Numbered from the stretch's first letter, positions 7,367 through 60,774 are shown. The stretch is DNA of 64,000 nt from Macrostomum lignano (GCA_002269645.1 NIVC01001481.1:62001-126000); one strand, 5' to 3'. Numbers and translations: made by a program. Notes: generated by a model from the sequence alone, not told the origin.

Positions 7367-10300
7367 TCATAGCCAGTGCTTGGGCACATAGGAGAAGTCA
7401 GTTTCCAATCGATAAGCCAGCTCAGACAGAGTCTCCAGCGCTACTGGCAAATCGTCATTAACCAAGGTAAAGTCGATCAGGTGGGCGCAGGCCGATTCCA
7501 TGCGCTGGCCCTCAATGACCATGGCCTCGAGTTCGGACAGAGTCAGCTGGCGCCCAGTATCGTACAGGCTGTCCTGCTGCTGCAGCAGATGCGGCGCCCT
7601 GGTCTCTCTGAGCACGTCCAACGGAGGCGGCTTAACGTAGACAACGAAAGCTCGAAGCGACGGAGTGCGCAGGCCCAGTAGGCAGTGAGGCGGCGGCCCG
7701 TGCGGCACGCAGACTGGCACGCGGCCATCGCGGAGCAGTTTAGTCAGCGAGTCGACTGGCAGAGCCCAGGTCTCGTTGCCGCCGTCCTCTGTCCACTGTT
7801 CGGCCAGGCGGCCGGCTTCGGCTAGGGCCCGGATTTGAGCGGCCGTGAGAGACACGAATGGTTCCGGGCGCTGCTGAGATCGGGTGGAGACAAGCACAGG
7901 CAGAGCAAAGTGTTCCCGATCCGTGCCAACCAGCTGTCTGGCCAGTTCTCGCCGGCCAACACCGGACGGTCCGATCAGCACTAGCGGCCGGTAGGGCGGC
8001 ACAGGCGAACCAGTTGGGCCGTCCGGCTGGCCGGGATAAAATCGGCCGAGCTCTTCGTAGAATTGCGGCGGCGGCTGCTGCTGGTCGGAGCCGGAGCTGT
8101 CTGCTTTTTTAGAAAGTACAAATAGTAAAAAATAGCTTAGCATGCTACTTAACAGCGAGGTGACTAGTAGTATCAACTGCGAAGTTTTCGTTAATTAGAC
8201 TGTGTCATATCGGCGCTACATTTGCCCAATTGGCGCCACATAAACCCTAGTTGGCGCTGGGTGCATGGGATTTTGGCACCAAATAATCCCTAGTTGGCGC
8301 TGGGTGCATGGGATTTTGGCACCAAATAATCCCTAGTTGGCGCTGGGTGCATGGCGCTGGGTGCATGGGATTTTGGCGCCACATGATCCCTAGTTGGCGC
8401 TGGGTGCATGGGATTTTGGCGCCACATGATCCCTAGTTGGCGCTGGGTGCATGGGATTTTGGCGCCCTATAATCCCTAGTTGGCGCTGGGTGCATGGGAT
8501 TTTGGCGCCACATGATCCCTAGTTGGCGCTGGGTGCATGGGATTTTGGCGCCCTATAATCCCTAGTTGGCGCTGGGTGCATGGGATTTTGGCGCCAAATG
8601 ATCCCTAGTTGGCGCTGGGTGCATGGGATTTTGGCGCCCTATAATCCCTAGTTGGCGCTGGGTGCATGGGATTTTGGCGCCCTATAATCCCTAGTTGGCG
8701 CTGGGTGCATGGGATTTTGGCGCCACATGATCCCTAGTTGGCGCTTGGTGCATGGGATTTTGGCGCCCTATAATCCCTAGTTGGCGCTGGGTGCATGGGA
8801 TTTTGGCGCCACATGATCCCTAGTTGGCGCTGGGTGCATGGGATTTTGGCGCCAAATGATCCCTAGTTGGCGCTGGGTGCATGGGATTTTGGCGCCCTAT
8901 AATCCCTAGTTGCGTTGGGTGCATGGGATTTTGGCACCCTATAATCCCTAGTTGGCGTTGGGTGCATGGGATTTTGGTGCCCTATAATCCCTAGTTGGCG
9001 TTGGGTGCACGGGAGTTTCGCCCCACATAATCTCTATTTGGCTTTGTGTACACACACGTACACATGGCTGCTGTACACAAATACATGAAGTTGAGAAGCG
9101 CTATAAAAATCTTCACCTAACAAAATGAAATCAAGCTTCGCCACACTTCCACTAACCTCGATGCGCCGTTGCCGGAGATGAAGGCGACGAAGTGGCCGAG
9201 GACGCCGTGGACTTTACACTCGATCTTCGGCCCTGCTGCTGCTGCTGTTGTTGAAGCTGCTGCTGCTTTTGATACCGCCGAAGCAGCAGATCCGTGCTGG
9301 GCACCAGACCGGCTCGCCGCCTGGCGTCGCCCTCCTTGATCGCCTGCCACCAATCGCCGTCCTCGCGATTAACCAGCTGCAAGATGTCGCCTAGCCGCAG
9401 ACAGAGTCCAGCCTCTTGGCACGGTATGAGCCCGTCATCCGCTGGGTTGTAGTTGAATAGCACTCGCACGGTGGCCGGACTGACACCGACTTGTTGCTGT
9501 CCGCCGCTGCTGACGCTCCCAACGCCTCCAGCTGTTGACGAGGATCTGCGCTCAGACGGCAGTACGGAGAGTCGGACGTTGCCACGGGCGGTGGTCAGCA
9601 TTCGAATAGCCGTCATGGGGTCCTGGCCGGCCACTAGCACCTGAGAATGAGTAAATGCCAATTTCCAATGCATTAGCCTTTCATTACACAAACATTTTAA
9701 TACACTTGGCCACCACTGATCTGCCCGCTAGCTAGATGCCTCACTGATCTGCCCGCTAGCTAGATGCCTCACTGATCTGCCCGCTAGCTAGATGCCTCAC
9801 TGATCTGCCCGCTAGCTAGATGCCTCACTGATCTACCCGCTAGCTAGATGCCTCACTGATCTGCCCGCTAGCTAGATGCCTCACTGATCTGCCCGCTAGC
9901 TAGATGCCTCACTGATCTGCCCGCTAGCTAGATGCCTCACTGATCTGCCCGCTAGCTAGATGCCTCACTGATCTGCCCGCTAGCTAGATGCCTCACTGAT
10001 CTGCCCGCTAGCTAGATGCCTCACTGATCTGCCCGCTAGCTAGATGCCTCACTGATCTGCCCGCTAGCTAGATGCCTCACTGATCTGCCCGCTAGCTAGA
10101 TGCCTCACTGATCTGCCCGCTAGCTAGATGCCTCACTGATCTGCCCGCTAGCTAGATGCCTCACTGATCTGCCCGCTAGCTAGATGCCTCACTGATCTGC
10201 CCGCTAGCTAGATGCCTCACTGATCTGCCCGCTAGCTAGATGCCTCACTGATCTGCCCGCTAGCTAGATGCCTCACTGATCTACCCGCTAGCTAGATGCC

Positions 10301-14247: not shown

Positions 14248-15298
14248 TCTAATTTATAACAAAAAAGGTCAATTAATAGGTTTTTTAAGTCTATTATCAA
14301 AGTCAACACAAAAGCAGTAAATAATTAATACTATATTGTTGAAGATATAATGCTAATATTAAGTATACCTTAATTTAGAGATGATAATTCTTTTATATTT
14401 TATTCTCAATCTTAACTTTTTTATTTCTTTATTATTTTTTAGAAATTTGCTATTCAAATCAATATAGAATGATATAGGCCTAGCTTAAAATATTTGTCTA
14501 GACTATAGCACAAAAATATACAAAGTCTCTAACTATTTAGTAGCATTCATATGCAACCTTGGGAATCACTTGGCTGTTGCAAGAGACTGCTCTTGGCCAA
14601 TAGCGACTTACATGTGTGTGTTGCCAATAGAAACAGCCAGGTGAATTTGTAGGTTGCGCCCAAGCATGTTTAGTAGGATAGGTAAACTTAGTGGTCAATC
14701 ATTGCAGGCAGATGCAGTAGACTCAACTCAAGCAACTCAATTATCATGGGACATGGTGCACTAACAAAACTATGCCATAGCTGGCCTCTTACCAGCACCT
14801 AAAACCATTGTTTATTGTTGCTATTCTATCTATAGGACTACCTATTCACCAGTTTCACTAGTTGACAGTTGCCAATTTATATGTTAAAATTTATTGGTAT
14901 TTCTATGAATATGTTATAGCATTCATCATTAAACTAGCTTAAACATAAATTACAAATCTTTAAAGAAAATAATTGAATGCACAAAAGTAAAGGACTACCA
15001 ATATTGATAAAAAAACTAGGCCTAACTTTATGGCCAAAATTATCATACTACCAAATGGGCAAATTCATTGTGAAGTTTTGTAACCTTTTAATTCATTACT
15101 CAACCAATTTTCAAAAGTAAGGTGTCATTTTACTCATGAAAAGGAGATTCATTCACCAGATTCGGTCATTCAGATGGAATAAGGGTTAGGCCGCGGGTAA
15201 ACTTCAACAATATAGTATTAATTATTTACTGCTTTTGTGTTGACTTTGATAATAGACTTAAAAAACCTATTAATTGACCTTTTTGTTATAAATTAGAC
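14248..15298. repeat. ~97-bp near-perfect inverted repeat pair (14248-14344 / 15202-15298)
   Basis: TCTAATTTATAACAAAAAAGGTCAATT...CTATATTGTTGAAG reappears reverse-complemented ~860 bp later, differing only in the A/T run length by eye. Confidence 0.85.
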
Positions 15299-17397: not shown

Positions 17398-18569
17398 TCA
17401 GCCCTGTTCGGCCCCCAGCTTCTTAGCCAGAGCTGCAACATTATTTGGGGGCACCACGCCCGTGTCCGTCACTATGGCCGTGATTAGCTCGGCCGGAGTA
17501 ACGTCGAACGCCGGATTCCAGATGTCAATGCCGCGACAAGCAATTCGTTGGCCGGCAACGCAGGCCAACTCGTCGGACGGCCGCTCCTCGATGACGATCT
17601 CCGAACCGGTGCGCATGCTAAAATCAATGCTAGTAAGAGGCGCCGCCACGAAGAACGGTATGGAATGATGACGAGCCAGTACGGCAATCTGATAGGTGCC
17701 AATCTTGTTCGCGGTGTCGCCGTTGGACACGATCCGATCGGCACCCAGGACAACAGCGTGCACTCGGCCGCTTGCCATGGCCGCGGCAACCATGCTGTCG
17801 CAGATTAGAGTGCCCGGCAGCCCGTCAACAACGATTTCGTAGGCTGTGAGCCTGGCGCCCTGGTTGTAGGGTCGAGTCTCTGTGCAGAATATCCGGCCTA
17901 AGCGCCCTCGATTGTGCAGGCTGCGCACAACGCCTAGTGCGGTGCCGTAGCCTCCGGTGGCTAAAGAGCCCGTGTTGCAGTGAGTCAGCACGTTCACTTG
18001 GCCACCAGGTGGTACGAGGCCGCGCTCTTCGACACTTTGTAGTAGGGCATTGGCGCCAGCCTCTCCAATGGCTCGGCAGGAGCGGACATCTTGTTCCAGC
18101 TGCGACTCCAGCCATTCCACAGCGGCCAGACGCTGACCGGCTACGTCCATTGCTGACCAGTCGGTGGATAGAAGGCGAAACATCCGTTCGCGGCTGTCCT
18201 GCAGATTGACGGCAGTTGGACGGGCCGACACCAGTCGGTCCCATTTGGCGCCTAACCAGGCGGACAATTTTGCCGAACTGTCCACCTGAGACAGGGTGTC
18301 CGGCGATTTCAGCTCTACAGCCATGGCTAAGCTGCCAACAATGCCAATGGCTGGGGCGCCACGAACCTGAGAAATCCAGAGATTAGATGCAGCTGTATGC
18401 TCTCAATGTCAAGACGCAATGTAACAAAATTACGCACCTGCATCCTTTTAATAGCTGACCAGGCTTCCTCACAGCTGGCGATACGAATGTACACTGTCTG
18501 ATGCGGCAAAAGCAATTGATCAATAAGTGACAGCTCGCCATTGGCGTAGCGAATTGCTTCAAGCGACAT
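17398..18569 (-). CDS. MRI1: Methylthioribose-1-phosphate isomerase; exons 18569-18438 and 18366-17398; 366 aa
   Basis: [88 protein letters not shown]; one 71-nt phase-0 GT-AG intron. Confidence 0.96.
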
Positions 18570-29174: not shown

Positions 29175-30437
29175 ATGGCTAAGTACTCGCGCACCAACCT
29201 CATCATCAACTACTTGCCTCAGGCCTTCTCAGATGACGAGTTCCGCGCCCTGTTCGGCAGCGTGGCGCCGGTGAAACGGGCCAAAGTGTGCCGGGACAAG
29301 CGCAGCGGCTACAGCTTCGGCTTCGGCTTCTGCGAGTTTTACACGGCCGAGGATGCCAGCAGAGCCGTGCGGATGCTGAACGGCCTGCAGCTGCACCGCA
29401 AGACAATCAAAGTTGCCCACGCCAGACTGCAGAGCTCGGAGTCGAAGAACTGCAATTTGCACATCACCAACCTGCCGCCAACTGTCACGGCTGAGGACAT
29501 TCGGGCCGTTCTGGAACCGCACGGTGGCATCATTAACTGCAAGATTCTGCCTGGCGGCCATCGGGGCGGCGGCGGGGCCCGCGGTGTCGGGTTCTGCCTG
29601 TTCGAGACCCGGTCGGCGGCGGCCTCTGCGCTGGCCGCTCTGAACGGGAAGCCGTGGCCGGGCTCGGCCGAGGCAGCCGCCGACAGTCCGCAGCAGCTTG
29701 TCCAGGTTCGATTCGCCGACGAGAACGAGAAGAAAGTCCGGCCGCCAGCGGTGTCAGGCGCTGCCGCCTCCTCGACACAGTCACTGCCGCTGCCGCCACC
29801 ACCTCCGCCGCCTTCGACATCGATGTCATCTCTACCGGCGCAGCTTCCGCATCATCAGGTCCATCAACATCTGTCCTCCTTGCCGCTGTCTCTGGTGCCT
29901 CAGCCGCCTCAGATGCCGCTGCCGCCGCCACCGCTGCCGCCTCCGCTGATGCCGCAGGCCTACGACTTTTCCACCTTCTACGCCATGCAACAGCAGCACG
30001 GCCTGCCCCCGACCTACGGCTACCCGACCGCCCTCTACTCCGCCTTCCCAGGCTGCCCCCCGGCCCAGTTCTACCCTCCAGTGCCGACTTCGGAGCTTCC
30101 GCAACAGCCGCAGTCTCAGCCGCCTCAGTCGGCTCTGGCGCCACCACCGCCGCCGCCGCCGCCTCCAGCCTTCATCGTCAGCGTGTGCAACCTGCCACCG
30201 GGCACCGACGAGTGTCAGCTCTGGTCAATGTTCTGCCAGTTTGGCGGCCTTGCCGAAGTCCGCCTGGAGCCCAGCTCCGGCCGCCAGCCAGCACCGGCCG
30301 AGGGCGACCTTCAGCCGCCGGGCGCCTCCGCCGCGGTGGGTTTCGCGTCATATCAGGCGGCGGCCAGCGCAGTGGCCCACTGGAATGGCCAGAGTCTTGG
30401 CGGGCGGCAGCTGCAGGTGTGGCTGCGGCTGCCCTGA
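29175..30437 (+). CDS. ELAV/Sex-lethal-family RNA-binding protein, three RRMs with a Pro/Gln-rich hinge, intronless, 420 aa
   Basis: First in-frame ATG at 29175; RRM1 TNLIINYLPQ...RDKRSGYSFGFGF...LNGLQLHRKTIKVAHAR; RRM2 NLHITNLP...RGVGF; degenerate RRM3 VCNLPPGTDECQLWSMFCQFG. Confidence 0.88.
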   Translation: MAKYSRTNLIINYLPQAFSDDEFRALFGSVAPVKRAKVCRDKRSGYSFGFGFCEFYTAEDASRAVRMLNGLQLHRKTIKVAHARLQSSESKNCNLHITNLPPTVTAEDIRAVLEPHGGIINCKILPGGHRGGGGARGVGFCLFETRSAAASALAALNGKPWPGSAEAAADSPQQLVQVRFADENEKKVRPPAVSGAAASSTQSLPLPPPPPPPSTSMSSLPAQLPHHQVHQHLSSLPLSLVPQPPQMPLPPPPLPPPLMPQAYDFSTFYAMQQQHGLPPTYGYPTALYSAFPGCPPAQFYPPVPTSELPQQPQSQPPQSALAPPPPPPPPPAFIVSVCNLPPGTDECQLWSMFCQFGGLAEVRLEPSSGRQPAPAEGDLQPPGASAAVGFASYQAAASAVAHWNGQSLGGRQLQVWLRLP

Positions 30438-30830: not shown

Positions 30831-32765
30831 TCCCTCCGTGCCTCCCCTCCGTCCCTCACCTCTGTGCCTCCCCTCTGTGCTTCTCCCTCCGTGCCTCTCC
30901 CTCTGTGCCTCCCCTCTGTGCCTCCCCTCTGTGCCTTCCCTCTGTGCTTCTCCCTCCGTGCCTCCCCCTCCGTGCCTTCCCTCCCCTCTGTGCCTCCCCT
31001 CTGTGCCTCCCCTCTGTGCCTCCCCCTCTGTGCCTCCCCTCTGTGCCTCCCCTCTGTGCCTCCCCTCTGTGCCTCCCCTCTGTGCCTCTCCCTCTGTGCC
31101 TCCCCTCTGTGCCTCCCCTCTGTGCCTCCCCTCTGTGCCTCTCCCTCTGTGCCTCCTCTCTGTGCCTCCTCTCTGTGCCTCCCCCTCTGTGCCTTCCCTC
31201 TGTGCCTCCCTTCCCCTCTGTGCCTCCCCTCTGTTCCTTCCCTCTGTGCCTCCCCTCCGTGCCTCCCCTCTGTGCCTCCCCTCTGTGCCTCCCCCTCTGT
31301 GCCTCCCCTCTGTGCCTCCCCCTCTGTGCCTTCCCTCTGTGCCTCCCCTCCGTCCCTCACCTCTGTGCCTCCCCTCTGTGCTTCTCCCTCCGTGCCTCCC
31401 CCTCCGTGCCTCTCCCTCTGTGCCTCCCCTCTGTGCCTCCCCCTCTGTGCCTTCCCTCTGTGCCTCCCCTCCCCTCTGTGCCTCCCCTCTGTGCCTCCCC
31501 TCTGTGCCTCCCCTCTGTGCCTCCCCTCTGTGCCTCTCCCTCTGTGCCTCCCCTCTGTGCCTCCCCTCTGTGCCTCTCCCTCTGTGCCTCCCCTCTGTGC
31601 CTCCCCTCTGTGCCTCTCCCTCTGTGCCTCCCCTCTGTGCCTCCCCTCTGTGCCTCCCCCTCTGTGCCTTCCCTCTGTGCCTCCCCTCTGTGCCTCCCCT
31701 CTGTGCCTCCCCTCTGTGCCTCCCCTCTGTGCCTCCCCCTCTGTGCCTTCCCTCTGTGCCTCCCCTCCCCTCTGTGCCTCCCCTCCCCTCTGTGCCTCCC
31801 CTCCCCTCTGTGCCTCCCTCTGTGCCTTCCCCTGTGCCTCCCCTCTGTGCCTCCCCTCTGTGCCTCCCCTCTGTGCCTCTCCCTCTGTGCCTCCCCTCTG
31901 TGCCTCTCCCTCTGTGCCTCCCCTCTGTGCCTCCTCTCTGTGCCTCCCCTCTGTGCCTCCCCTCCCCTCTGTGCCTCTCCCTCTGTGCCTCCCCCCTGTG
32001 CCTCTCCCTCTGTGCCTCCCCTCTGTGCCTCCCCTCTGTGCCTCCCCTCTGTGCCTCCTCTCTGTGCCTCTCCCTCTGTGCCTCCCCTCTGTGCCTCTCC
32101 CTCTGTGCCTCCCCTCTGTGCCTCTCCCTCTGTGCCTCCCCTCTGTGCCTCCCCTCTGTGCCTCTCCCTCTGTGCCTCTCCTTCTGTGCCTCGCCTCTGT
32201 GCCTCTCCTCTGTGCCTTCCCTCTGTGCCTCTCCCTCTGTGCCTCTCCTCTGTGCCTCTCCTCTGTGCCTCTCCTCTGTGCCTCTCCCTCTGTGCCTCCC
32301 CTCTGTGCCTCCCCTCTGTGCCTCCCCTCTGTGCCTATCCTCTGTGCCTCCCCTCTGTGCCTCCCCTCTGTGCCTCCCCTCTGTGCCTCTCCCTCTGTGC
32401 CTCTCCTCTGTGCCTCTCCCTCTGTGCCTCCCCTCTGTGCCTCCCCTCTGTGCCTCCCCTCTGTGCCTATCCTCTGTGCCTCTCCCTCTGTGCCTCCCCT
32501 CTGTGCCTCTCCCTCTGTGCCTCCCCTCTGTGCCTATCCTCTGTGCCTCTCCCTCTGTGCCTCCCCTCTGTGCCTCCCCTCTGTGCCTCCCCTCTGTGCC
32601 TATCCTCTGTGCTTCCTCTCCGTGCCTCTCCCTCTGTGCCTCCCCTCTGTGCCTCCCCTCTGTGCCTCCCCTCCGTGCCTCCCCTCTGTGCCTCCCCTCT
32701 GTGCCTCCTCTCTGTGCCTCTCCCTCTGTGCCTCTCCCTCCGTGCCTCCCCTCTGTGCCTCCCCC
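30831..32765. repeat. ~1.9-kb pyrimidine-rich minisatellite built from CCTCTGTGCCTC(C) variants
   Basis: Read directly; + strand almost free of A. Confidence 0.95.
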
Positions 32766-37820: not shown

Positions 37821-38537
37821 TTCCACACAAGGAAATCAACTAGACTCCAGTCCAGTTTGTAGATCCCAGTTGTCCATGACAGCCGGACAGATGGCAACAG
37901 ATGCCAGCTGGCTGACAGTACGCGTATCATAATAGCTCCCATGGGTGGTCGAATTCGATAGTAAGATAGTGAAAGCTATCCCCGAGGCTCACGCAGGTTC
38001 AAGGAGGACCGACACCCGTCTAACCCCCGGTTTCGCCCCAGGATATTAAGGGAAACCCCACCCACCCACGCCATCCCGTCCACAACCACCGATTGCGTCA
38101 CCCATTTGCGCCCAGGCCCGGCCCAGCTGCTCATCCACAGTAGTCAGTGGCTTGCTTGGTTTCTCAAAGCCCTCCTGCAGAAAATTGGCGCGGGAGTCGG
38201 CCCGGGAAGACAGACCAGGTTGGGGGAGAAAAAACAGGTCACCAGTTGGTCAAGAGACCCACGCGCCAAACCTAATCCACTGATTGGCGGTAGATTGCGG
38301 ATGGCAGAATTGAGATCTCTGAGGATGAAAGCTTTTCTCTTTGCGAGCATAGGACAGACTGTCATCAAAATTATCCCAACCCTGCTCTGTCTGACTGTCT
38401 GTCCCCTGAAGGGGATTAATAGGATAGAATAGATTGGAGACGGCAGAGCACTGCAGCCATACGGCGCTGAAATCAAAGTCAAGCTGATATAATAAGATGC
38501 AGAATGAGAAATGGGCTGAGGACACATTTAAGAATAT

Positions 38538-38858
38538 ACTGAGGATAGACTGGGGATAGACTGAGGATAGACTGAGGATAGATTTGGGGATAGACTGGGG
38601 ATAGACTGAGGATAGACTGAGGATAGACTAGGGATAGACTGAGGATAGACTGAGATTGAGGATAGACTGAGGATATACTGAGGATATACTGAGGATAGAC
38701 TGAGGATAGACTGAGGATAGACTGAGGATAGATTGAGGATAGACTGAGGATAGACTGAGGATAGACTGAGACTGAGGATAGACTGAGGATATACTGAGGA
38801 TAGACTGAGGATAGACTGAGGATAGACTGAGGATAGACTGAGGATAGACTGAGGATAG
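38538..38858. repeat. 11-bp minisatellite (GAGGATAGACT)n, left part, interrupted by the LTR element
   Basis: Same unit resumes at 41050. Confidence 0.95.
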
Positions 38859-39177
38859 TGTCGCGACTTTGCTAGTCATTTCTTTAGTTCACCTTCACTT
38901 GTCTCTGTTTACTCTGTTTTCTCTCTTCTCTGTCCAGCTCAATCTTGTTATTCTTATCTCTCTCTCTCCCTTGCTGCGTTCTGATTGGCTCTCCGTTCTC
39001 GCCTCTTTCCTCAGTCGCGCACTCCACCCCTCTCTTTATTATCTGCAATTCAAACCCCCTAAGTTAATGTCTGGTATAAATATACTTGTTTGGGCCCTGC
39101 GCCCACTTACTGGCTTATCTTCGGTTCAATTTAACTCCAAGTAACTCTCTAGTCTTTAGTTTAGTATTTTTTCTACA
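38859..39177 (+). repeat. 5' LTR (319 bp)
   Basis: Starts TGTCGCGAC, ends TTCTACA; contains CTGATTGG (reverse CCAAT) and TATAAATA. Confidence 0.93.
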
Positions 39178-40730
39178 TGGCGCCCAATGAAAAATAATTA
39201 AGTCAATTCAGTAAGGCTGGCAAAGGCCATGCCATCGTCATAGTCGTAACCCTCCACCAGTCATCTCGTCATCCCGTCTGTCGGCCTCATCGCTTCGTTT
39301 GTCGGCCTCATCGCTTCGTCTGTCGGCCTCATCGCTTCGTCTGTCGGCCTCATCGCTTCGTCTGCCGGGGGTGCGTCCTGCGGTGTCCTCGGTCTCTCTC
39401 GGTCTCAAATTCTCGGCCGGGGCACCTCAGGGCTCGCCTGCCGGATCGTCTCTTCGCTCGTCGTCTGCCGGGGGTGCGTCCTGCGGTGTCCTCGGTCTCT
39501 CTCGGTTTCCAATTCTCTGCCGGGGCGCCTCGGGGCTCGCCTGCCGGATCGTCTCTTCGCTCGCCTTCCGGATCGTCTCTTCGCTCGTCGTCTGCCGGGG
39601 GTGCGTCCTGCGGTGTCCTCGGTCTCTCTCGGTTCAAATTCTCGGCCGGGGCGCCTCGGGGCTCGCCTGCCGGATCGTCTCTTCGCTCATCGCCTGCCGG
39701 ATCGTCTCTTCGCTCATCGCCTGCCGGATCGTCTCTTCGCTCATCGCCTGCCGGATCGTCTCTTCGCTCATCGCCTGCCGGATCGTCTCTTCGCTCATCG
39801 CCTGCCGGATCGTCTCTTCGCTCATCGCCTGCCGGATCGTCTCTTCGCTCATCGCCTGCCGGATCGTCTCTTCGCTCATCGCCTGCCGGATCGTCTCTTC
39901 GCTCGTCGTCTGCCGGGGGTGCGTCCTGCGGTGTCCTCGGTCTCTCTCGGTTTCCAATTCTCTGCCGGGGCGCCGCGGGCTCGCCTGCCGGATCGTCTCT
40001 TCGCTCATCGCCTGCCGGATCGTCTCTTCGCTCGTCGTCTGCCGGGGGTGCGTCCTGCGGTGTCCTCGGTCTCTCTCGGTTTCCAATTCTCTGCCGGGGC
40101 GCCGCGGGGCTCGCCTGCCGGATCGTCTCTTCGCTCATCGCCTGCCGGATCGTCTCTTCGCTCGTCGTCTGCCGGGGGTGCGTCCTGCGGTGTCCTCGGT
40201 CTCTCTCGGTTTCCAATTCTCTGCCGGGGCGCCGCGGGGCTCGCCTGCCGGATCGTCTCTTCGCTCATCGTCTGCCGGGGGTGCGTCCTGCGGTGTCCTC
40301 GGTCTCTCTCGGTTCAAATTCTCGGCCGGGGCGCCTCGGGGCTCGCCTGCCGGATCGTCTCTTCGCTCATCGCCTGCCAGATCGCCTCGTTAATTCGTCA
40401 TTCAATTTTTTCTTTCACCATGTAGTCACAATGTAAAAAATTAAATTAATTTTTAGGGGGGAAGGCGGATATATTCAGTCTTTTCAGTCTTCTCATTGGT
40501 TCAAAAACTACTCAATAAAAATCTAAGTTTAAAATTCGGTCTAAATATTTTGCATTCGCTCTACTGTTTTTGTATTCAAATTCTTAGTCATTATGTATTT
40601 TTCAAATCGTTTTATACACCATTTATTGTGAATGTGTTTTTCAATTTAATTCGACCTAATTCTAACTCATTAATTTCAATTGGTAATGGTACTCGAAAAT
40701 TCAAAAAATGTTCCATTTTTTTGGGGGGAG

Positions 40731-41049
40731 TGTCGCGACTTTGCTAGTCATTTCTTTAGTTCACCTTCACTTGTCTCTGTTTACTCTGTTTTCTCTCTTC
40801 TCTGTCCAGCTCAATCTTGTTATTCTTATCTCTCTCTCTCCCTTGCTGCGTTCTGATTGGCTCTCCGTTCTCGCCTCTTTCCTCAGTCGCGCACTCCACC
40901 CCTCTCTTTATTATCTGCAATTCAAACCCCCTAAGTTAATGTCTGGTATAAATATACTTGTTTGGGCCCTGCGCCCACTTACTGGCTTATCTTCGGTTCA
41001 ATTTAACTCCAAGTAACTCTCTAGTCTTTAGTTTAGTATTTTTTCTACA
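40731..41049 (+). repeat. 3' LTR (319 bp)
   Basis: No differences from the 5' LTR seen by eye; both give the same 90-aa conceptual translation in the ORF track. Confidence 0.93.
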
Positions 41050-41320
41050 GATAGACTGAGGATAGACTGAGGATAGACTGAGGATAGACTGAGGATAGAC
41101 TGAGGATAGACTGAGGATAGACTGAGGATAGACTGAGGATAGACTGAGGATAAACTGAAGATAGACTGAGGATAGACTGGGGATAGATATGGGGTTAGAA
41201 TGAGGATAGACTGAGGATAAACTGAAGATAGACTGAGGATAGACTGGGGATAGATATGGGGTTAGAATGAGGATAGACTGGGGATAGACTGAGGATAGAC
41301 GGAGGATAGACGGAGGATAA
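41050..41320. repeat. 11-bp minisatellite (GAGGATAGACT)n, right part
   Basis: Continuation of the array to the left of the LTR element, degenerating toward 41320. Confidence 0.93.
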
Positions 41321-50934: not shown

Positions 50935-51501
50935 TCAAAAACAGGTAAAACTACTCACTGCTGAGAGTTGCTGCGCAAAGCTCTGCTGCTGCTGTTGCTG
51001 TTGCTGTTGCTGCAGGTCTTCCATGTCGAAGCAGTCGTCGTCCTCTTCTTCATCCGTGGCGTTGAGGTCGGCGAAGGGCCGCCTGGCGCGAAGGCTCCGC
51101 TCCAGAGCCGCCTTGCTCTCCCGGATGGCCACCCGGTACAGATCTTCGCTCAGGTGCTCCGTCAGCTGCTCCTCCAGGTCGACGATGTAGTCGATGGCTG
51201 CCTGCAGGATCTTCAGCTGGCCCCTGTGCGAGTCGCTGCTGACGCCGGCCTTCTGCAGCCACGGGATCGCCTGGTGGAGCATCTCGAAGTTCTCAACAAC
51301 CTCCTCGCCAGAGAACTCCTCAGTCTGTAGTGGACAGCCGCTGCCGCCGCCGCTGCCGCCACAGCAGAAGTCCAGATTTTCAACGCCGTCAACTTCGATG
51401 TCTTCGTCGGTGGCGTCGCCAACTGCTGATGCAGCCTTCTCGATGGTCGGCTCAAGCATCAGCACCTCCTTGGCAATGTTGCAGATGGGGAAGTTCTCCA
51501 T
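50935..51501 (-). CDS. Id/extramacrochaetae-like HLH protein lacking a basic region, intronless, 188 aa
   Basis: ENFEMLHQAIP...QLKILQAAIDYIVDLEEQL aligns with Id HLH (YSRLKELVP...SKVEILQHVIDYILDLQ); the segment before helix 1 is acidic; RRPFADLN resembles the Id D-box RTPLTTLN. Confidence 0.8.
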   Translation of the reverse strand: MENFPICNIAKEVLMLEPTIEKAASAVGDATDEDIEVDGVENLDFCCGGSGGGSGCPLQTEEFSGEEVVENFEMLHQAIPWLQKAGVSSDSHRGQLKILQAAIDYIVDLEEQLTEHLSEDLYRVAIRESKAALERSLRARRPFADLNATDEEEDDDCFDMEDLQQQQQQQQQQSFAQQLSAVSSFTCF

Positions 51502-52304: not shown

Positions 52305-54560
52305 AGCAGTGTAATCTGGGGTAGCGAATGGGGGCAGTGAATCGGGGGCAGTGTAATCTGGGGTAGCGAATGGGGGCAGTGAATCGGGGGCAGTGTAATC
52401 TGGGGTAGCGAATGGGGGTAGTGTAATCTGGGGTAGCGAATGGGGGCAGTGTAATCTGGGGTAGCGAATGGGGGCAGTGAATCGGGGGCAGTGTAATCTG
52501 GGGTAGCGAATGGGGGTAGTGTAATCTGGGGTAGCGAATGGGGGCAGTGTAATCTGGGGTAGCGAATGGGGGCAGTGAATCGGGGGCAGTGAATCGGGAC
52601 AGTGAATCGGGGACAGTGAATCGGGGGCAGTGAATCGGGGACAGTGAATCGGGACAGTGAATCGGGGGCAGTGAATCGGGGGCAGTGTAATCTGGGGTAG
52701 CGAATGGGGGCAGTGTAATCTGGGGTAGCGAATGGGGGCAGTGTAATCTGGGGTAGCGAATGGGGGCAGTGAATCGGGGGCAGTAAATCGGGGGCAGTGA
52801 ATCGGGGGCAGTGTAATCTGGGGTAGCGAATGGGGGCAGTGTAATCTGGGGTAGCGAATGGGGGCAGTGAATCGGGGGCAGTGAATCGGGACAGTGAATC
52901 GGGGACAGTGAATCGGGGGCAGTGAATCGGGGACAGTGAATCGGGACAGTGAATCGGGGGCAGTGAATCGGGGGCAGTGTAATCTGGGGTAGCGAATGGG
53001 GGCAGTCTAATCTGGGGTAGCGAATGGGGGCAGTGTAATCTGGGGTAGCGAATGGGGGCAGTGTAATCTGGGGTAGCGAATGGGGGCAGTGTAATCTGGG
53101 GTAGCGAATGGGGGCAGTGAATCGGGGGCAGTGAATCGGGGACAGTGAATCGGGGGCAGTGAATCGGGGGCAGTGAATCGGGGGCAGTGTAATCTGGGGT
53201 AGCGAATGGGGGCAGTGAATCGGGGGCAGTAAATCGGGGCAGTGTAATCTGGGGTAGCGAATGGGGCAGTGTAATCTGGGGTAGCGAATGGGGGCAGTGT
53301 AATCTGGGGTAGCGAATGGGGGCAGTGTAATCTGGGGTAGCGAATGGGGGCAGTGTAATCTGGGGTAGCGAATGGGGGCAGTGAATCGGGGGCAGTGAAT
53401 CGGGGACAGTGAATCGGGGGCAGTGAATCGGGGGCAGTGAATCGGGGGCAGTGTAATCTGGGGTAGCGAATGGGGGCAGTGAATCGGGGGCAGTAAATCG
53501 GGGGCAGTGTAATCTGGGGTAGCGAATGGGGGCAGTGTAATCTGGGGTAGCGAATGGGGGCAGTGTAATCTGGGGTAGCGAATGGGGGCAGTGAATCGGG
53601 GGCAGTGAATCGGGGGCAGTGAATCGGGGACAGTGAATCGGGGGCAGTGAATCGGGGACAGTGAATCGGGACAGTGAATCGGGGGCAGTTAATCGGGGGC
53701 AGTGAATCGGGGCAGTGTAATCTGGGGTAGCGAATGGGGGCAGTGTAATCTGGGGTAGCGAATGGGGGCAGTGTAATCTGGGGTAGCGAATGGGGGCAGT
53801 GTAATCTGGGGTAGCGAATGGGGGCAGTGAATCGGGGGCAGTGAATCGGGGACAGTGAATCGGGGGCAGTGAATCGGGGGCAGTGTAATCTGGGGTAGCG
53901 AATGGGGGCAGTGTAATCTGGGGTAGCGAATGGGGGCAGTGAATCGGGGGCAGTGAATCGGGGACAGTGAATCGGGGACAGTGAATCGGGGGCAGTGAAT
54001 CGGGGGCAGTGTAATCTGGGGTAGCGAATGGGGGCAGTGAATCGGGGGCAGTGAATCGGGACAGTGAATCGGGGGCAGTGAATCGGGGACAGTGAATCGG
54101 GGGCAGTGAATCGGGGGCAGTGAATCGGGGATAGTGAATCATGCACAGTGAATGGGAGGACAGTGAATCGGGGACAGTGAATCGGGGATAGTGAATCATG
54201 CACAGTGAATGGGAGAACAGTGAATCATGCACAATGAATGGGGGACAGTGAATCGGGGGCAATAAATGGGGGGCAGTGAATCGGCGACAGTGAATCTGGG
54301 ATAGTGAATTGGGGATAGTGAATCGGGGGCAGTAAATGGGGGGCAGTGAATCGGCGACAGTGAATCTGGGATAGTGAATTGGGGATAGTGAACCAGGGAC
54401 AGTGAATCGGTGATAGTGAATCTGGGATAGTGAACCGGGGATAGTGAATCTGTGATAGTGAACCGGGGATATTGAACCGGGGATAGTGAATCTGGGATAG
54501 TGAATCGGGGAGAATGAGTCATTCACAGTGAATGGGGGACAGTGAATCATGCACAGTGAA
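52305..54560. repeat. ~2.2-kb G-rich compound minisatellite of 14-bp and 28-bp units
   Basis: GCAGTGAATCGGGG interspersed with GCAGTGTAATCTGGGGTAGCGAATGGGG; degenerate monomers at the right end. Confidence 0.95.
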
Positions 54561-55099
54561 TCGCATTGATGAATAGCATTTAGGCTAGCTGTGCCCAGCC
54601 TGCCTGCAGGCCATTTCGCATTATTTACCATAATTTGAAAAAGCTAAACAGCAAATTATGCTCTTGATCAAAATATTTATGCCACATTGGGTTGGTCGGG
54701 ATTCTGGGGCAAACGGCATATCCCAGCCTAGGCCCATTTTGTCACAGCCGGCGAGCCGCGCGCAGACAGCCATTCAGACAGCCGCAAACAGCCCCCATAT
54801 GGATTCTGTGTAAACTGAATACAAGCCTGTCAGGCCGAGTCTAAACACCCCCCCCCCTTGTCATCATCCTTCTGCTCCCCAAATCGCTTCTGTATATACA
54901 TAGAACTTGAACCCAAGCGAACCCACACCTATCCAAAACTCATAAACATTCGATTGGGTTGGGCCAAACAGCAGTTGTTGCTCCCTATCTCCCACACACT
55001 CTCTCTGCGCTGGGGCAATGGAAATATCAGATTCCATCTGGAAGAAAATATTGAATTAGCTGCTTTGTACAGGAAATATATAGTGGTCTTCCAATAGAA

Positions 55100-59298: not shown

Positions 59299-60774
59299 TC
59301 AGGCGCGAACGCTGCGCAGTCGAGCGAGCCGGAGCTCCCTCTCCAGCATCTCTACGTCGTCATAATACCGACCGTAGTAGTACGGATAAAAGTACGAATG
59401 ATAGGGACTGTAGTAGTATGGATAGTAGTAGGGCCTGTAGGGCCGGTATGGCGAGCCGCTTCGCCGCAGGGTGTCGGCGACTCGCTCGTGAAGGTCGGCG
59501 GACGTCAGGGCCGGGTAGCGCTCGCTCAGCGTCGGCCGGGACGGCGACGGCGACGGCGACCTTGGACGGGCCCGCGACGGCGCCTGCGCCTCCGCCAGAG
59601 ACGACGTCGAACGGCGCAAATCGGCGGCGGATCGACTGCGCTTCAGACGTCCGGTGCCACCGCCCTCGCCGACGCCGCCGCTTCTCGCCTTTGCCTCGCC
59701 GTAATTATCGTGCATAGTCGGCGTCCTGCCGACTAGCGAGTTTTCCACGCGCCGAACAACAAACGGTGGTCGACCGTTCGACGCCCCGCAGGCCGCCGCG
59801 GCAGCCGATTTTGTCGGCGGTTTCTTCGATCGAGTTGACGGTTCGTCCAGATCGTCGCAGAGGGCCTTCAGCCGGGGGCTCGGCGATCGGGAGCGCATAG
59901 CGGCGGCCAGCGTCTGCCGCTCGTAGTTGTTGGCGCCGCCGCCGCTACCGCCACCGCCACCAGACTGCCTCAGTCGCCGGGACCGGGATCGAGACCGGGA
60001 CCGGCGGGCGCCGTTGACGCCGACTGAGCTGCCGTTGGCTTTCGAGGTTGCCAGGAGGCCGCCGCCCGGCAGCAGCTCCTCGATGGCGGCGTAGGTGGCG
60101 AATTCGAGCCTGGGCGGCACGCCGGGAAAGTCCAGGGTTCGCGTCATAAGGATGTCGCGGCTGGCCGAGTGGCTGGTCCGGCCGGCCAGAGGGCCGAAGA
60201 AGTCGCGGCAGTTGGTCTCGTGGTAGGCCAGCAGGCAGCCGCCCAGGTAAATGTCCGTCACCTGGGCGGGAAATAAGATCAGTCAAAAGTTGATTCGTTA
60301 GTACGAGTAGTTTTCAGTAGTATTAGTAGTAGTATTATTCGTCCAGTGATCGTTTCTAAATTTTTTTTCAAAAATGCACCTCAAACTTCTGGACGTCGTC
60401 CTTCCACTTGAGTCGTTCATGGTGTGCTTGCAGTCAAATTTACGTCGAATAAAGCTGAGTACAAAAAGTTAAATTACATGTAGTTCAAAACAGTAACCAA
60501 ACGTTACCTGTCGCAGCTCCAGCGTCACCGGAGCGTCAGCCAGCAGGTCGGTCACTACGAAGGCGTCCTCGGCTGTCCAGAACAGGCGCTCGAACTGGAA
60601 TCGCTCGTGAACGTTCAGTGGGAAGGCGGCTTCCAGCAGGCGGGTCCGCTTGGCCTGCCCAAAGACGACAACTACCAGAAAGAGGTCGTCCCGGATGGGG
60701 AGCCGCGTGCCCGGCGAGGACACCACGTCCAGCGTCAGCTCCAGCGTGCATTTGAATCCGCCGCCGCTAGACAT
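59299..60774 (-). CDS. SPATA6: Spermatogenesis-associated protein 6-like; exons 60774-60508 and 60261-59299; 409 aa
   Basis: CTLELTLDVVSSPG..RDDLFLVVVVFGQAKRT..FPL..RFQFERLF...LELRQ and YHETNCRDF..RDILMTR..FPG..PRLEFAT match the SPATA6 N-terminal domain; phase-0 GT-AG intron; low-complexity RS/Y-rich tail. Confidence 0.88.

What the first reader, a model, noticed from the sequence alone, without database searches (positions are those of the whole stretch)
38859..41049. Young non-autonomous LTR retroelement whose cargo is a higher-order GC-rich tandem array
Seen: 319-bp TG..CA LTRs with no differences by eye, PBS TGGCGCCCAA abutting the 5' LTR, GGGGGGAG PPT abutting the 3' LTR, a 5-bp GATAG duplication, and a 1553-bp interior with no gag/pol remnant. 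Established: TGGCGCCCAACGTGGGGC is the tRNA-Lys(CUU) PBS, and matching LTRs indicate recent insertion. Inference: a TRIM/LARD-like element mobilised in trans that spreads its internal satellite as cargo, which would be a route for seeding new minisatellite families. This is the most complete system-like structure I found in the window.
Basis: partly seen in the sequence, partly recalled or inferred. Interest (0 to 1): 0.72.

Follow-up and report, generated by a model that had tools for sequence, protein, structure and literature searches.

The report
Gene-less flatworm retrotransposon carrying a minisatellite
This is a real, recently inserted, gene-less LTR retrotransposon in the flatworm Macrostomum lignano whose interior is mostly a GC-rich tandem array; such elements are already known in plants, so it is a tidy but ordinary example.

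Summary
Two 319-bp TG..CA LTRs (38859-39177, 40731-41049) are 100% identical. TGGCGCCCAA follows the 5' LTR directly and GGGGGGAG precedes the 3' LTR. GATAG flanks both ends. Removing the element and one GATAG restores the perfect 11-bp phase of the host satellite. The 1553-bp interior has no gag, pol or env trace. 71% of it is tandem repeat: 21-mers, then seven 75-76-bp units, each followed by 1-9 copies of a 27-mer.

The window is Macrostomum lignano contig NIVC01001481.1. That genome is 21% LTR retrotransposons and 13% tandem repeats.

This is a non-autonomous LTR retroelement, but at 2.2 kb it fits neither strict TRIM (<1 kb) nor LARD (>4 kb). Trans-mobilisation and satellite seeding are inferences. 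I could not search the genome DNA, so copy number, solo LTRs and the autonomous partner stay unknown. One diverged relative of the interior turned up, in M. lignano gene model A0A1I8JQV4, with the same block order and a shorter array. That suggests the array is an old built-in part of the element, not fresh cargo.

Non-autonomous LTR elements with internal satellite-like arrays are documented in sugar beet, and in Ogre elements of grass pea (Lathyrus sativus). Verdict: new member of a known kind, modest interest.

The parts
38534..38858 (.). Host 11-bp satellite (ATAGACTGAGG)n, left part of the insertion target
   Evidence: TRF: period 11, 30.4 copies. The phase continues across the element once one GATAG is removed.
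38854..38858 (+). Left copy of the 5-bp target-site duplication GATAG
   Evidence: Read directly. Phase test.
38859..39177 (+). 5' LTR, 319 bp, TG..CA. It carries an inverted CCAAT box (ATTGG, 38984-38988) and a TATA box (TATAAATA, 39075-39082).
   Evidence: 319/319 identical to the 3' LTR. The motifs were read from the sequence; their function is inferred.
39178..39189 (+). Primer-binding site TGGCGCCCAAtG. The first 10 nt are complementary to the 3' end of tRNA-Lys(CUU) (Lys1,2); pairing reaches 12 nt with one G:U pair.
   Evidence: Only occurrence in the window, 0.09 expected. The reference PBS sequence comes from PMC1084362 and PMC8775094. The host tRNA was not available; no tRNA gene lies in the window.
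39190..39274 (+). Short unique leader
   Evidence: From about 39239 onward it is partly conserved in M. lignano protein model A0A1I8JQV4.
39275..39357 (+). 21-bp tandem repeat (CGTCTGTCGGCCTCATCGCTT), about 4.5 copies. It shares the TCGYCTGYCGG start with the A and B units.
   Evidence: TRF, family D7, array parse.
39358..40378 (+). Composite GC-rich array (67% GC). Seven 75-76-bp A units are each followed by 1, 2, 9, 2, 2, 1 and 1.3 B units of 27 bp. The higher-order periods are 103 bp (A-B) and 130 bp (A-B-B).
   Evidence: TRF: period 130 x3.3 at 99% and period 27 x14.4. Parse. A3 equals A7, A5 equals A6, and 12 of the 18 B units are identical. No Pfam hit and no true protein relative except one M. 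lignano model.
40379..40722 (+). AT-rich (29% GC) unique tail. It holds a second PPT-like motif, T5-AGGGGGGAAGG, at 40450-40465.
   Evidence: Composition, sequence. It holds only two short ORFs (34 aa and the start of an 83-aa one), neither with a Pfam hit.
40723..40730 (+). Polypurine tract GGGGGGAG, preceded by a T7 run
   Evidence: Read directly. It abuts the 3' LTR.
40731..41049 (+). 3' LTR, 319 bp
41050..41054 (+). Right copy of the target-site duplication GATAG
41050..41319 (.). Host 11-bp satellite, right part of the insertion target
   Evidence: TRF: period 11, 24.4 copies.

Best explanation
This is a recently integrated, non-autonomous LTR retrotransposon of the flatworm Macrostomum lignano. 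It is 2191 bp long and sits inside an 11-bp host satellite.

Shown by the sequence:
- identical LTRs
- a tRNA-Lys(CUU)-type PBS
- a PPT
- a 5-bp staggered-cut duplication
- no coding capacity

Inferred mechanism:
1. Transcription starts about 30 bp downstream of the TATA box in the 5' LTR.
2. The RNA is packaged by Gag and copied by the reverse transcriptase and integrase of an unidentified autonomous LTR element of the same genome. Minus-strand synthesis is primed by tRNA-Lys and plus-strand synthesis by the PPT.
3. Integrase inserts the DNA copy with a 5-bp duplication.

The GC-rich 21-mer/A/B array fills 71% of the interior and begins about 100 bp after the PBS. It is an inherited part of the element's leader. 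Its unit number changes by replication slippage, unequal exchange and probably template switching during reverse transcription. Each new insertion therefore deposits a ready-made short array at a new locus. Whether any such array later grows into a free satellite is not shown.
For: Structure:
- LTRs are 319/319 identical with TG..CA ends.
- The PBS is unique in the window and lies exactly at LTR+1. It matches the published tRNA-Lys1,2 PBS over 10 nt.
- The PPT abuts the 3' LTR.
- The 5-bp TSD is confirmed by restoration of the host satellite's phase.

No coding capacity:
- No Pfam domain in the six frames of the interior.
- No protein relatives for the LTR ORF or the array ORFs.
- No tRNA or Rfam RNA inside.

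The array is part of the element:
- A diverged M. lignano gene model (UniRef100_A0A1I8JQV4) translates the same order of leader, 21-mers, A, B, A, B, with fewer units.

Host context:
- The host is M. lignano assembly Mlig_3_7, whose genome is 20.7% LTR retrotransposons.
- A '2-kb long LTR retrotransposon' is mentioned as a transgene landing site.

Precedent:
- Non-autonomous LTR elements with internal satellite-like arrays exist in sugar beet.
- The same is reported for Ogre elements that lack pol.
Against: - Only one copy could be examined. No second copy with the same LTR, no solo LTR and no autonomous partner was found. The tools could not search flatworm genome DNA, so this is absence of a test, not a negative result.
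- The PBS pairs over only 10-12 nt and the PPT is only 8 nt. Both are at the short end of the usual range.
- The host's own tRNA-Lys sequence was not checked.
- No canonical AATAAA lies downstream of the TATA box in the LTR, so the U3/R/U5 borders are undefined.
- In the related gene model the array is followed by GC-rich sequence, not the AT-rich tail. The family's architecture is therefore not uniform, or that model is chimeric.
Confidence: 0.8

Rival explanations
1. In-situ deletion derivative. A full-length autonomous element inserted here, and its gag-pol region was then lost in a single deletion, for example by recombination involving the internal repeats. On this view the 2.2-kb form never transposed as such.
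For: No second copy of this exact architecture was found. The related M. lignano gene model shows the array followed by different, GC-rich sequence rather than the AT-rich tail. That sequence could be the interior of a longer relative.
Against: The identical LTRs leave little time for a secondary event. No fragment of any retroelement domain remains in the six frames. The interior keeps exactly the cis parts needed for replication: PBS, leader and PPT with its upstream T-run. That pattern is typical of families that propagate as non-autonomous elements.
Confidence: 0.12
2. Assembly artefact. The 319-bp duplication, the interior length or the array size was created or collapsed by the PacBio/Canu assembly of a very repeat-rich region.
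For: The window is 33% tandem repeat. The genome is described as hard to assemble and partly redundant. The number of identical 27-mers (8 in a row) is the kind of detail assemblers get wrong.
Against: An artefact would not produce TG..CA ends, a tRNA PBS at LTR+1, a PPT at LTR-1 and a 5-bp duplication that restores the host satellite's phase. At 2.2 kb the element is well within the span of single long reads.
Confidence: 0.04
3. Active satellite vector. The family is currently amplifying, and its arrays are the seeds of free-standing minisatellites in this genome.
For: The insertion is young. The array shows very recent expansion, with 12 of 18 B units identical and A5 equal to A6. Array length differs between the two known relatives. 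The host genome is 13% tandem repeat. The route is demonstrated for Ogre elements in Lathyrus.
Against: No free array of these monomers lies in the 64-kb window. None of the other ~30 unrelated arrays in the window lies between LTRs or next to a TGGCGCCCAA PBS. No evidence on copy number is available.
Confidence: 0.07

Closest known systems
Non-autonomous LTR retrotransposons with internal satellite-like arrays in sugar beet (PMC13570524; 10 of 115 families)
   Same: Both have short LTRs, a PBS and PPT, a TSD, no coding capacity and high LTR identity. In both, the internal region is enlarged by a satellite-like tandem array. Both fall in the 1.5-4 kb size range that has no agreed name.
   Different: Those elements are in a plant and this one is in a flatworm. 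There is no sequence relationship. The sugar beet families are defined from many copies, with solo LTRs and tandem arrangements, whereas here one copy and one diverged relative are known.
Ogre/Tat Ty3-gypsy elements whose UTR tandem repeats gave rise to satellites in Lathyrus sativus (PMC7004042)
   Same: Short arrays sit at a fixed place between the LTRs. They also occur in non-autonomous derivatives lacking pol. Unit number and sequence vary. They are proposed to arise during replication.
   Different: In Ogre the arrays lie in the 3' UTR, downstream of gag-pol. Here the array starts about 100 bp after the PBS, on the 5' side. For Ogre, expanded free arrays and a FISH distribution are shown. 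Here no free array is known.
TRIM (terminal-repeat retrotransposon in miniature), e.g. PbTRIM of the harvester ant (PMC3532108)
   Same: Both have LTRs of 100-350 bp, a non-coding interior holding only a PBS and PPT, a short TSD, and presumed mobilisation in trans.
   Different: TRIMs are under 1 kb overall (PbTRIM 480-781 bp) with a 100-300 bp interior. This element is 2191 bp with a 1553-bp interior. PbTRIM has a 4-bp TSD and a tRNA-Leu PBS.
LARD (large retrotransposon derivative)
   Same: Both are non-coding LTR elements presumed to depend on an autonomous partner.
   Different: LARDs have LTRs of about 4.4 kb and interiors of about 3.5 kb, more than 4 kb overall. This element is far smaller.
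SVA (SINE-VNTR-Alu) of hominids (my own knowledge; the abbreviation is listed in PMC5857280)
   Same: It works in a similar way. It is a non-autonomous retroelement whose centre is a GC-rich variable-number tandem repeat, copied in trans by another element's machinery, with unit number differing between copies.
   Different: SVA is a non-LTR composite mobilised by LINE-1 through target-primed reverse transcription. It has no LTRs, PBS or PPT.
Insect gypsy-group elements with tandem repeats in the 5' untranslated leader, e.g. the Su(Hw)-site array of Drosophila gypsy, which also uses a tRNA-Lys PBS (my own knowledge, not tested here)
   Same: The tandem array lies just downstream of the PBS in the leader, and the primer is tRNA-Lys.
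   Different: Those elements are autonomous (gag, pol, env) and their repeats are protein-binding sites with a known function. No function or binding factor is known here.

Membership tests
LTR retrotransposon (structural definition) | Two long terminal repeats in direct orientation with TG..CA ends | tested here: met
   319/319 identical; starts TG and ends CA.
LTR retrotransposon (structural definition) | Target-site duplication of 4-6 bp | tested here: met
   GATAG on both sides. Excising the element plus one copy restores the 11-bp phase of the host satellite.
LTR retrotransposon (structural definition) | PBS complementary to a tRNA 3' end, next to the 5' LTR | tested here: met
   TGGCGCCCAA at LTR+1 equals the first 10 nt of the published tRNA-Lys1,2 PBS. 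The host tRNA itself was not available.
LTR retrotransposon (structural definition) | Polypurine tract next to the 3' LTR | tested here: met
   GGGGGGAG at 40723-40730. It is short, at 8 nt.
Autonomous Ty3-gypsy, BEL-Pao or Ty1-copia element | gag and pol (protease, reverse transcriptase, RNase H, integrase) coding regions or their remnants | tested here: not met
   No Pfam hit in the six frames of the interior. The only long ORFs are read-throughs of the array and have no true homologues.
TRIM (strict sense) | Overall length under 1 kb (extended definition under 1.5 kb) | tested here: not met
   The element is 2191 bp.
TRIM (strict sense) | LTRs of about 100-350 bp and a non-coding interior with PBS and PPT | tested here: met
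   The LTRs are 319 bp and the interior is non-coding.
TRIM (strict sense) | Multi-copy family with conserved LTRs in the genome | not testable with these tools
   No collection at hand holds searchable flatworm genome DNA. Exact-pattern scans of metagenome, viral and prokaryote collections gave 0. Only one diverged relative of the interior is known, through a protein model.
LARD | Overall length above 4 kb with kilobase-scale LTRs | tested here: not met
   2191 bp overall with 319-bp LTRs. Definition.
Retrotransposon-derived satellite (Ogre type) | The same array sits at a fixed position inside different element copies | tested here: inconclusive
   The window copy and A0A1I8JQV4 share the order leader, 21-mers, A, B, A, B. 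That is only two data points, and the second is known only as a translation.
Retrotransposon-derived satellite (Ogre type) | Expanded free-standing arrays of the same monomer outside elements | tested here: not met
   Within the 64-kb window all 18 matches to the 27-mer lie inside the element. A genome-wide test was not possible.

The most novel reading that the evidence does not exclude
The element belongs to an active family that repeatedly drops ready-made GC-rich arrays into the genome. On this reading, such non-autonomous LTR elements are a main source of the unusually high minisatellite load of Macrostomum lignano (13% of the genome, 33% of this window). That would be the first animal counterpart of the Ogre-to-satellite route known from legumes.
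Probability: 0.07. Interest if true: 0.6.

Novelty: new member of a known kind. Interest (0 to 1): 0.3.

Why it matters
The element is a cleanly bounded, apparently very young insertion in a laboratory flatworm that can be made transgenic. That makes it a usable marker of ongoing LTR-element activity in M. lignano, and a candidate for asking which autonomous element supplies the machinery.

A genome-wide search could show many copies with arrays of different length, or free arrays of the same monomers. That would extend to animals the plant finding that LTR elements incubate and scatter satellite precursors. It could also help explain why this genome is so rich in minisatellites. Without those data it is one more non-autonomous LTR element.

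Tried and rejected
**Other copies through predicted proteins.** The LTR ORF (102 aa), the array + strand ORF (364 aa) and the array - strand ORF (288 aa) gave no hit at E<=0.001. The two array searches hit the 8000-candidate ceiling with low-complexity words, so they were not exhaustive.

**Exhaustive phmmer of the 364-aa ORF.** It gave 68 hits. Local tblastn, the sequences of twelve hits and source names for eleven of them indicate that all but one are unrelated 9-residue-repeat proteins from fish, moth and metagenomes. Only P0024 (M. lignano A0A1I8JQV4) is a true relative.

**Fetching DNA.** The look-up for P0024 found nothing on record. The same was true of the window's own 364-aa ORF and of the 188-aa ORF at 50935-51501, which I tried in order to reach a paralogous empty site.

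**Exact DNA scans.** The LTR/PBS junction, the LTR 5' end and the 27-mer gave 0 matches in metagenome, viral and prokaryotic genome collections. This was expected, because none of these collections holds flatworm DNA.

**Other ideas tested and dropped.**
- A second LTR pair in the window: self-BLAST of the TRF-masked window found none.
- A small RNA gene as cargo, as in Cassandra: no Rfam or tRNA hit.
- A structured RNA in the leader or the array: z-scores were +1.0 and -1.5, not significant.
- The C-terminal 529 aa of P0024 as gag-pol or a known host protein: no Pfam hit and no PDB sequence hit.
- Assigning a superfamily (gypsy, BEL-Pao or copia): TG..CA ends, a 5-bp TSD and a tRNA-Lys PBS are not diagnostic.

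Full report
**Where the window comes from.** The 420-aa RRM protein encoded at 29175-30437 is on record on one contig only. That contig is NIVC01001481.1 of assembly GCA_002269645.1, at 89175-94437. The window is therefore bases 60001-124000 of that 281-kb contig. [quoted passage not shown] That genome is 20.7% LTR retrotransposons and 13.1% tandem repeats. The GenBank annotation has no gene between 30437 and 42437.

**The observation.** All items hold.
- The two LTRs (38859-39177 and 40731-41049) are 319/319 identical, start TG and end CA. The AG just upstream of each LTR also matches, which is a 1-in-16 coincidence.
- TGGCGCCCAA begins at the first base after the 5' LTR. It is the only occurrence on either strand of the window, against 0.09 expected by chance.
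- Two papers give TGGCGCCCAACGTGGGGC as the PBS for tRNA-Lys1,2. The element matches its first 10 nt, or 12 nt if the T at position 11 pairs as G:U, and then diverges.
- GGGGGGAG, preceded by seven T, abuts the 3' LTR.
- GATAG flanks both ends. The element sits in an 11-bp satellite, so the duplication can be tested. Joining the flanks with both GATAG copies gives one 16-bp step in an otherwise regular 11-bp spacing. Removing one copy gives an unbroken 11-bp period. This is as good as an empty-site allele for showing a 5-bp staggered-cut insertion.

**The interior.** It is 1553 bp and divides into five parts.
- The PBS, followed by an 85-bp unique leader.
- 4.5 copies of a 21-mer.
- A 1021-bp composite array at 67% GC.
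- A 344-bp tail at 29% GC.
- The PPT.

The array consists of seven A units of 75-76 bp. They are followed by 1, 2, 9, 2, 2, 1 and 1.3 B units of 27 bp. This produces the 103-bp (A-B) and 130-bp (A-B-B) periods that TRF reports at 95-99% identity. The 21-mer, A and B units all begin TCGYCTGYCGG, so they share an origin. Homogeneity is extreme: 12 of the 18 B units are identical, A5 equals A6 and A3 equals A7. Tandem sequence makes up 71% of the interior.

**No coding capacity.**
- The six frames of the interior give no Pfam match at E<=0.01 (best 0.014, a low-complexity match).
- The long ORFs (364 aa on the + strand, 288 aa on the - strand) exist only because the GC-rich repeats lack stop codons. 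The 103- and 130-bp periods are not multiples of three, so each ORF wanders through all three frames of the units.
- There is no tRNA or Rfam family in the window. The cargo is therefore not a small-RNA gene of the Cassandra kind.
- The leader and one higher-order unit do not fold better than shuffled controls.

**Regulatory motifs (read from the sequence; function inferred).** The LTR has an inverted CCAAT box at 38984-38988 and TATAAATA at 39075-39082, about 95 bp before its end. No canonical AATAAA follows, so U3/R/U5 cannot be delimited.

**Age.** Zero differences in 319 bp puts the 95% upper bound on LTR divergence at about 0.9% (my own calculation, not a tool result). No substitution rate for Macrostomum is available, so this means 'young' only in relative terms. 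It is below roughly 0.5-5 million years at 1e-8 to 1e-9 per site per year. Gene conversion between the LTRs cannot be excluded.

**Search for other copies and for the partner.** This is the weak point.
- None of the DNA collections at hand contains flatworm genomes. Exact scans for the LTR/PBS junction, the LTR start and the 27-mer found nothing.
- Protein-level searches with the LTR ORF and both array ORFs found nothing. The two array searches were saturated by low-complexity candidates.
- An exhaustive phmmer run of the 364-aa ORF gave 68 hits. All but one match only the nine-fold ACRIVSSLI run. The twelve I read or traced are unrelated repeat proteins of fish, moth or metagenomic origin.
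- The exception is P0024, which is UniRef100_A0A1I8JQV4, a 677-aa M. lignano gene model. Its first ~150 residues align to window 39239-39739 with frameshifts. The aligned order is end of the leader, 21-mer repeats, A unit (LPGVRPAVSS-VSLGFQF is nearly identical), B, A, B.
- The rest of that model is Ala/Arg-rich, has no Pfam or PDB relative, and does not resemble the AT-rich tail. Its DNA is not on record.

At least one other, diverged locus in the same species therefore carries the same interior layout with a shorter array. That is weak evidence for a family. It is better evidence that the array is an old, inherited feature of the element's 5' region, not recently captured cargo.

**What the window says about 'seeding'.**
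- TRF masks 32.6% of the window, about 30 unrelated micro- and minisatellite arrays.
- After masking, the only LTR-like direct repeat pair is this element.
- The only TGGCGCCCAA in the window is its PBS.
- All 18 matches to the 27-mer lie inside it.

In this sample no other array shows a retroelement frame, and the element's own monomers have no free array.

**Most likely mechanism.** The shown steps are the structural hallmarks and the insertion event. The inferred steps are these.
1. Transcription from the 5' LTR.
2. Packaging and reverse transcription by the proteins of an autonomous M. lignano LTR element, with tRNA-Lys(CUU) as primer and the PPT for plus-strand priming.
3. Integration with a 5-bp duplication.
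4. Change of unit number by slippage, unequal exchange and template switching. For Ogre/Tat elements, abnormal strand transfers between co-packaged copies have been proposed.

The main rival is an in-situ deletion of a full-length copy. It cannot be excluded without more copies. It is less likely given the identical LTRs and an interior that retains the cis-acting parts (PBS, leader, PPT), the array and a non-coding tail, but no coding remnant.

**Comparison with known elements.**
- Structurally it is an LTR retrotransposon without genes.
- It fails strict TRIM on size (<1 kb, or <1.5 kb) and fails LARD (>4 kb). It lies in the 1.5-4 kb range for which a 2026 sugar beet survey notes there is no name.
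- That survey also reports that 10 of 115 non-autonomous families contain internal satellite-like arrays that enlarge the interior.
- In Lathyrus, nine satellites derive from short arrays in the 3' UTR of Ogre elements, including non-autonomous derivatives lacking pol.
- The differences here are the host (a flatworm), the position of the array (just after the PBS rather than in the 3' UTR) and the lack of any evidence for expanded free arrays.
- From my own knowledge, insect gypsy-group elements with leader repeats and hominid SVA elements are functional analogues.

**Verdict.** It is a new member of a known kind, of modest interest. It becomes more interesting only if a genome-wide search shows an amplifying family or free arrays of its monomers.

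Noticed in passing
window 1-64000: 32.6% of the window is masked by TRF. It holds about 30 unrelated micro- and minisatellite arrays with periods of 4 to 57 bp, several of them 1-2.4 kb long (for example 30832-32764 with period 13, and 52306-54563 with period 14). This is well above the 13% genome average reported for M. lignano.
   Followed up: partly
window 14248-15297: A ~1050-bp unit bounded by 97-bp terminal inverted repeats that are 99% identical (14248-14344 and 15202-15297). It lies inside an AT-rich block (29-32% GC, 12-16 kb). It looks like a MITE or other non-autonomous DNA transposon. No clear target-site duplication was seen by eye.
   Followed up: partly
window 40450-40465: A second PPT-like motif (TTTTT-AGGGGGGAAGG) lies just after the array, 270 bp upstream of the real PPT (TTTTTTT-GGGGGGAG). 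It could be a central PPT or a vestige of an internal duplication.
   Followed up: no
UniRef100_A0A1I8JQV4 (P0024), not in the window: A 677-aa M. lignano gene model named 'AMP-binding domain-containing protein' begins with a translation of a diverged copy of this element's leader and array. The remaining ~530 residues have no Pfam or PDB relative. The model is probably a repeat-derived or chimeric prediction, or an element-initiated transcript.
   Followed up: partly
window 7367-9691 (-), 17398-18324 (-), 29175-30437 (+), 59299-60261 (-): Host gene pieces. There is a MAGUK-like gene with guanylate-kinase and SH3 exons separated by a 43-bp minisatellite (8230-9042). There is an IF-2B family exon, probably methylthioribose-1-phosphate isomerase. 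There is an intronless two-RRM protein, and a SPATA6-like exon. Minisatellites sit between and beside exons.
   Followed up: partly
window 50935-51501 (-): A 188-aa ATG-started ORF with an acidic tail and a poly-Q run. It has no Pfam hit and is not on record as a called gene.
   Followed up: partly
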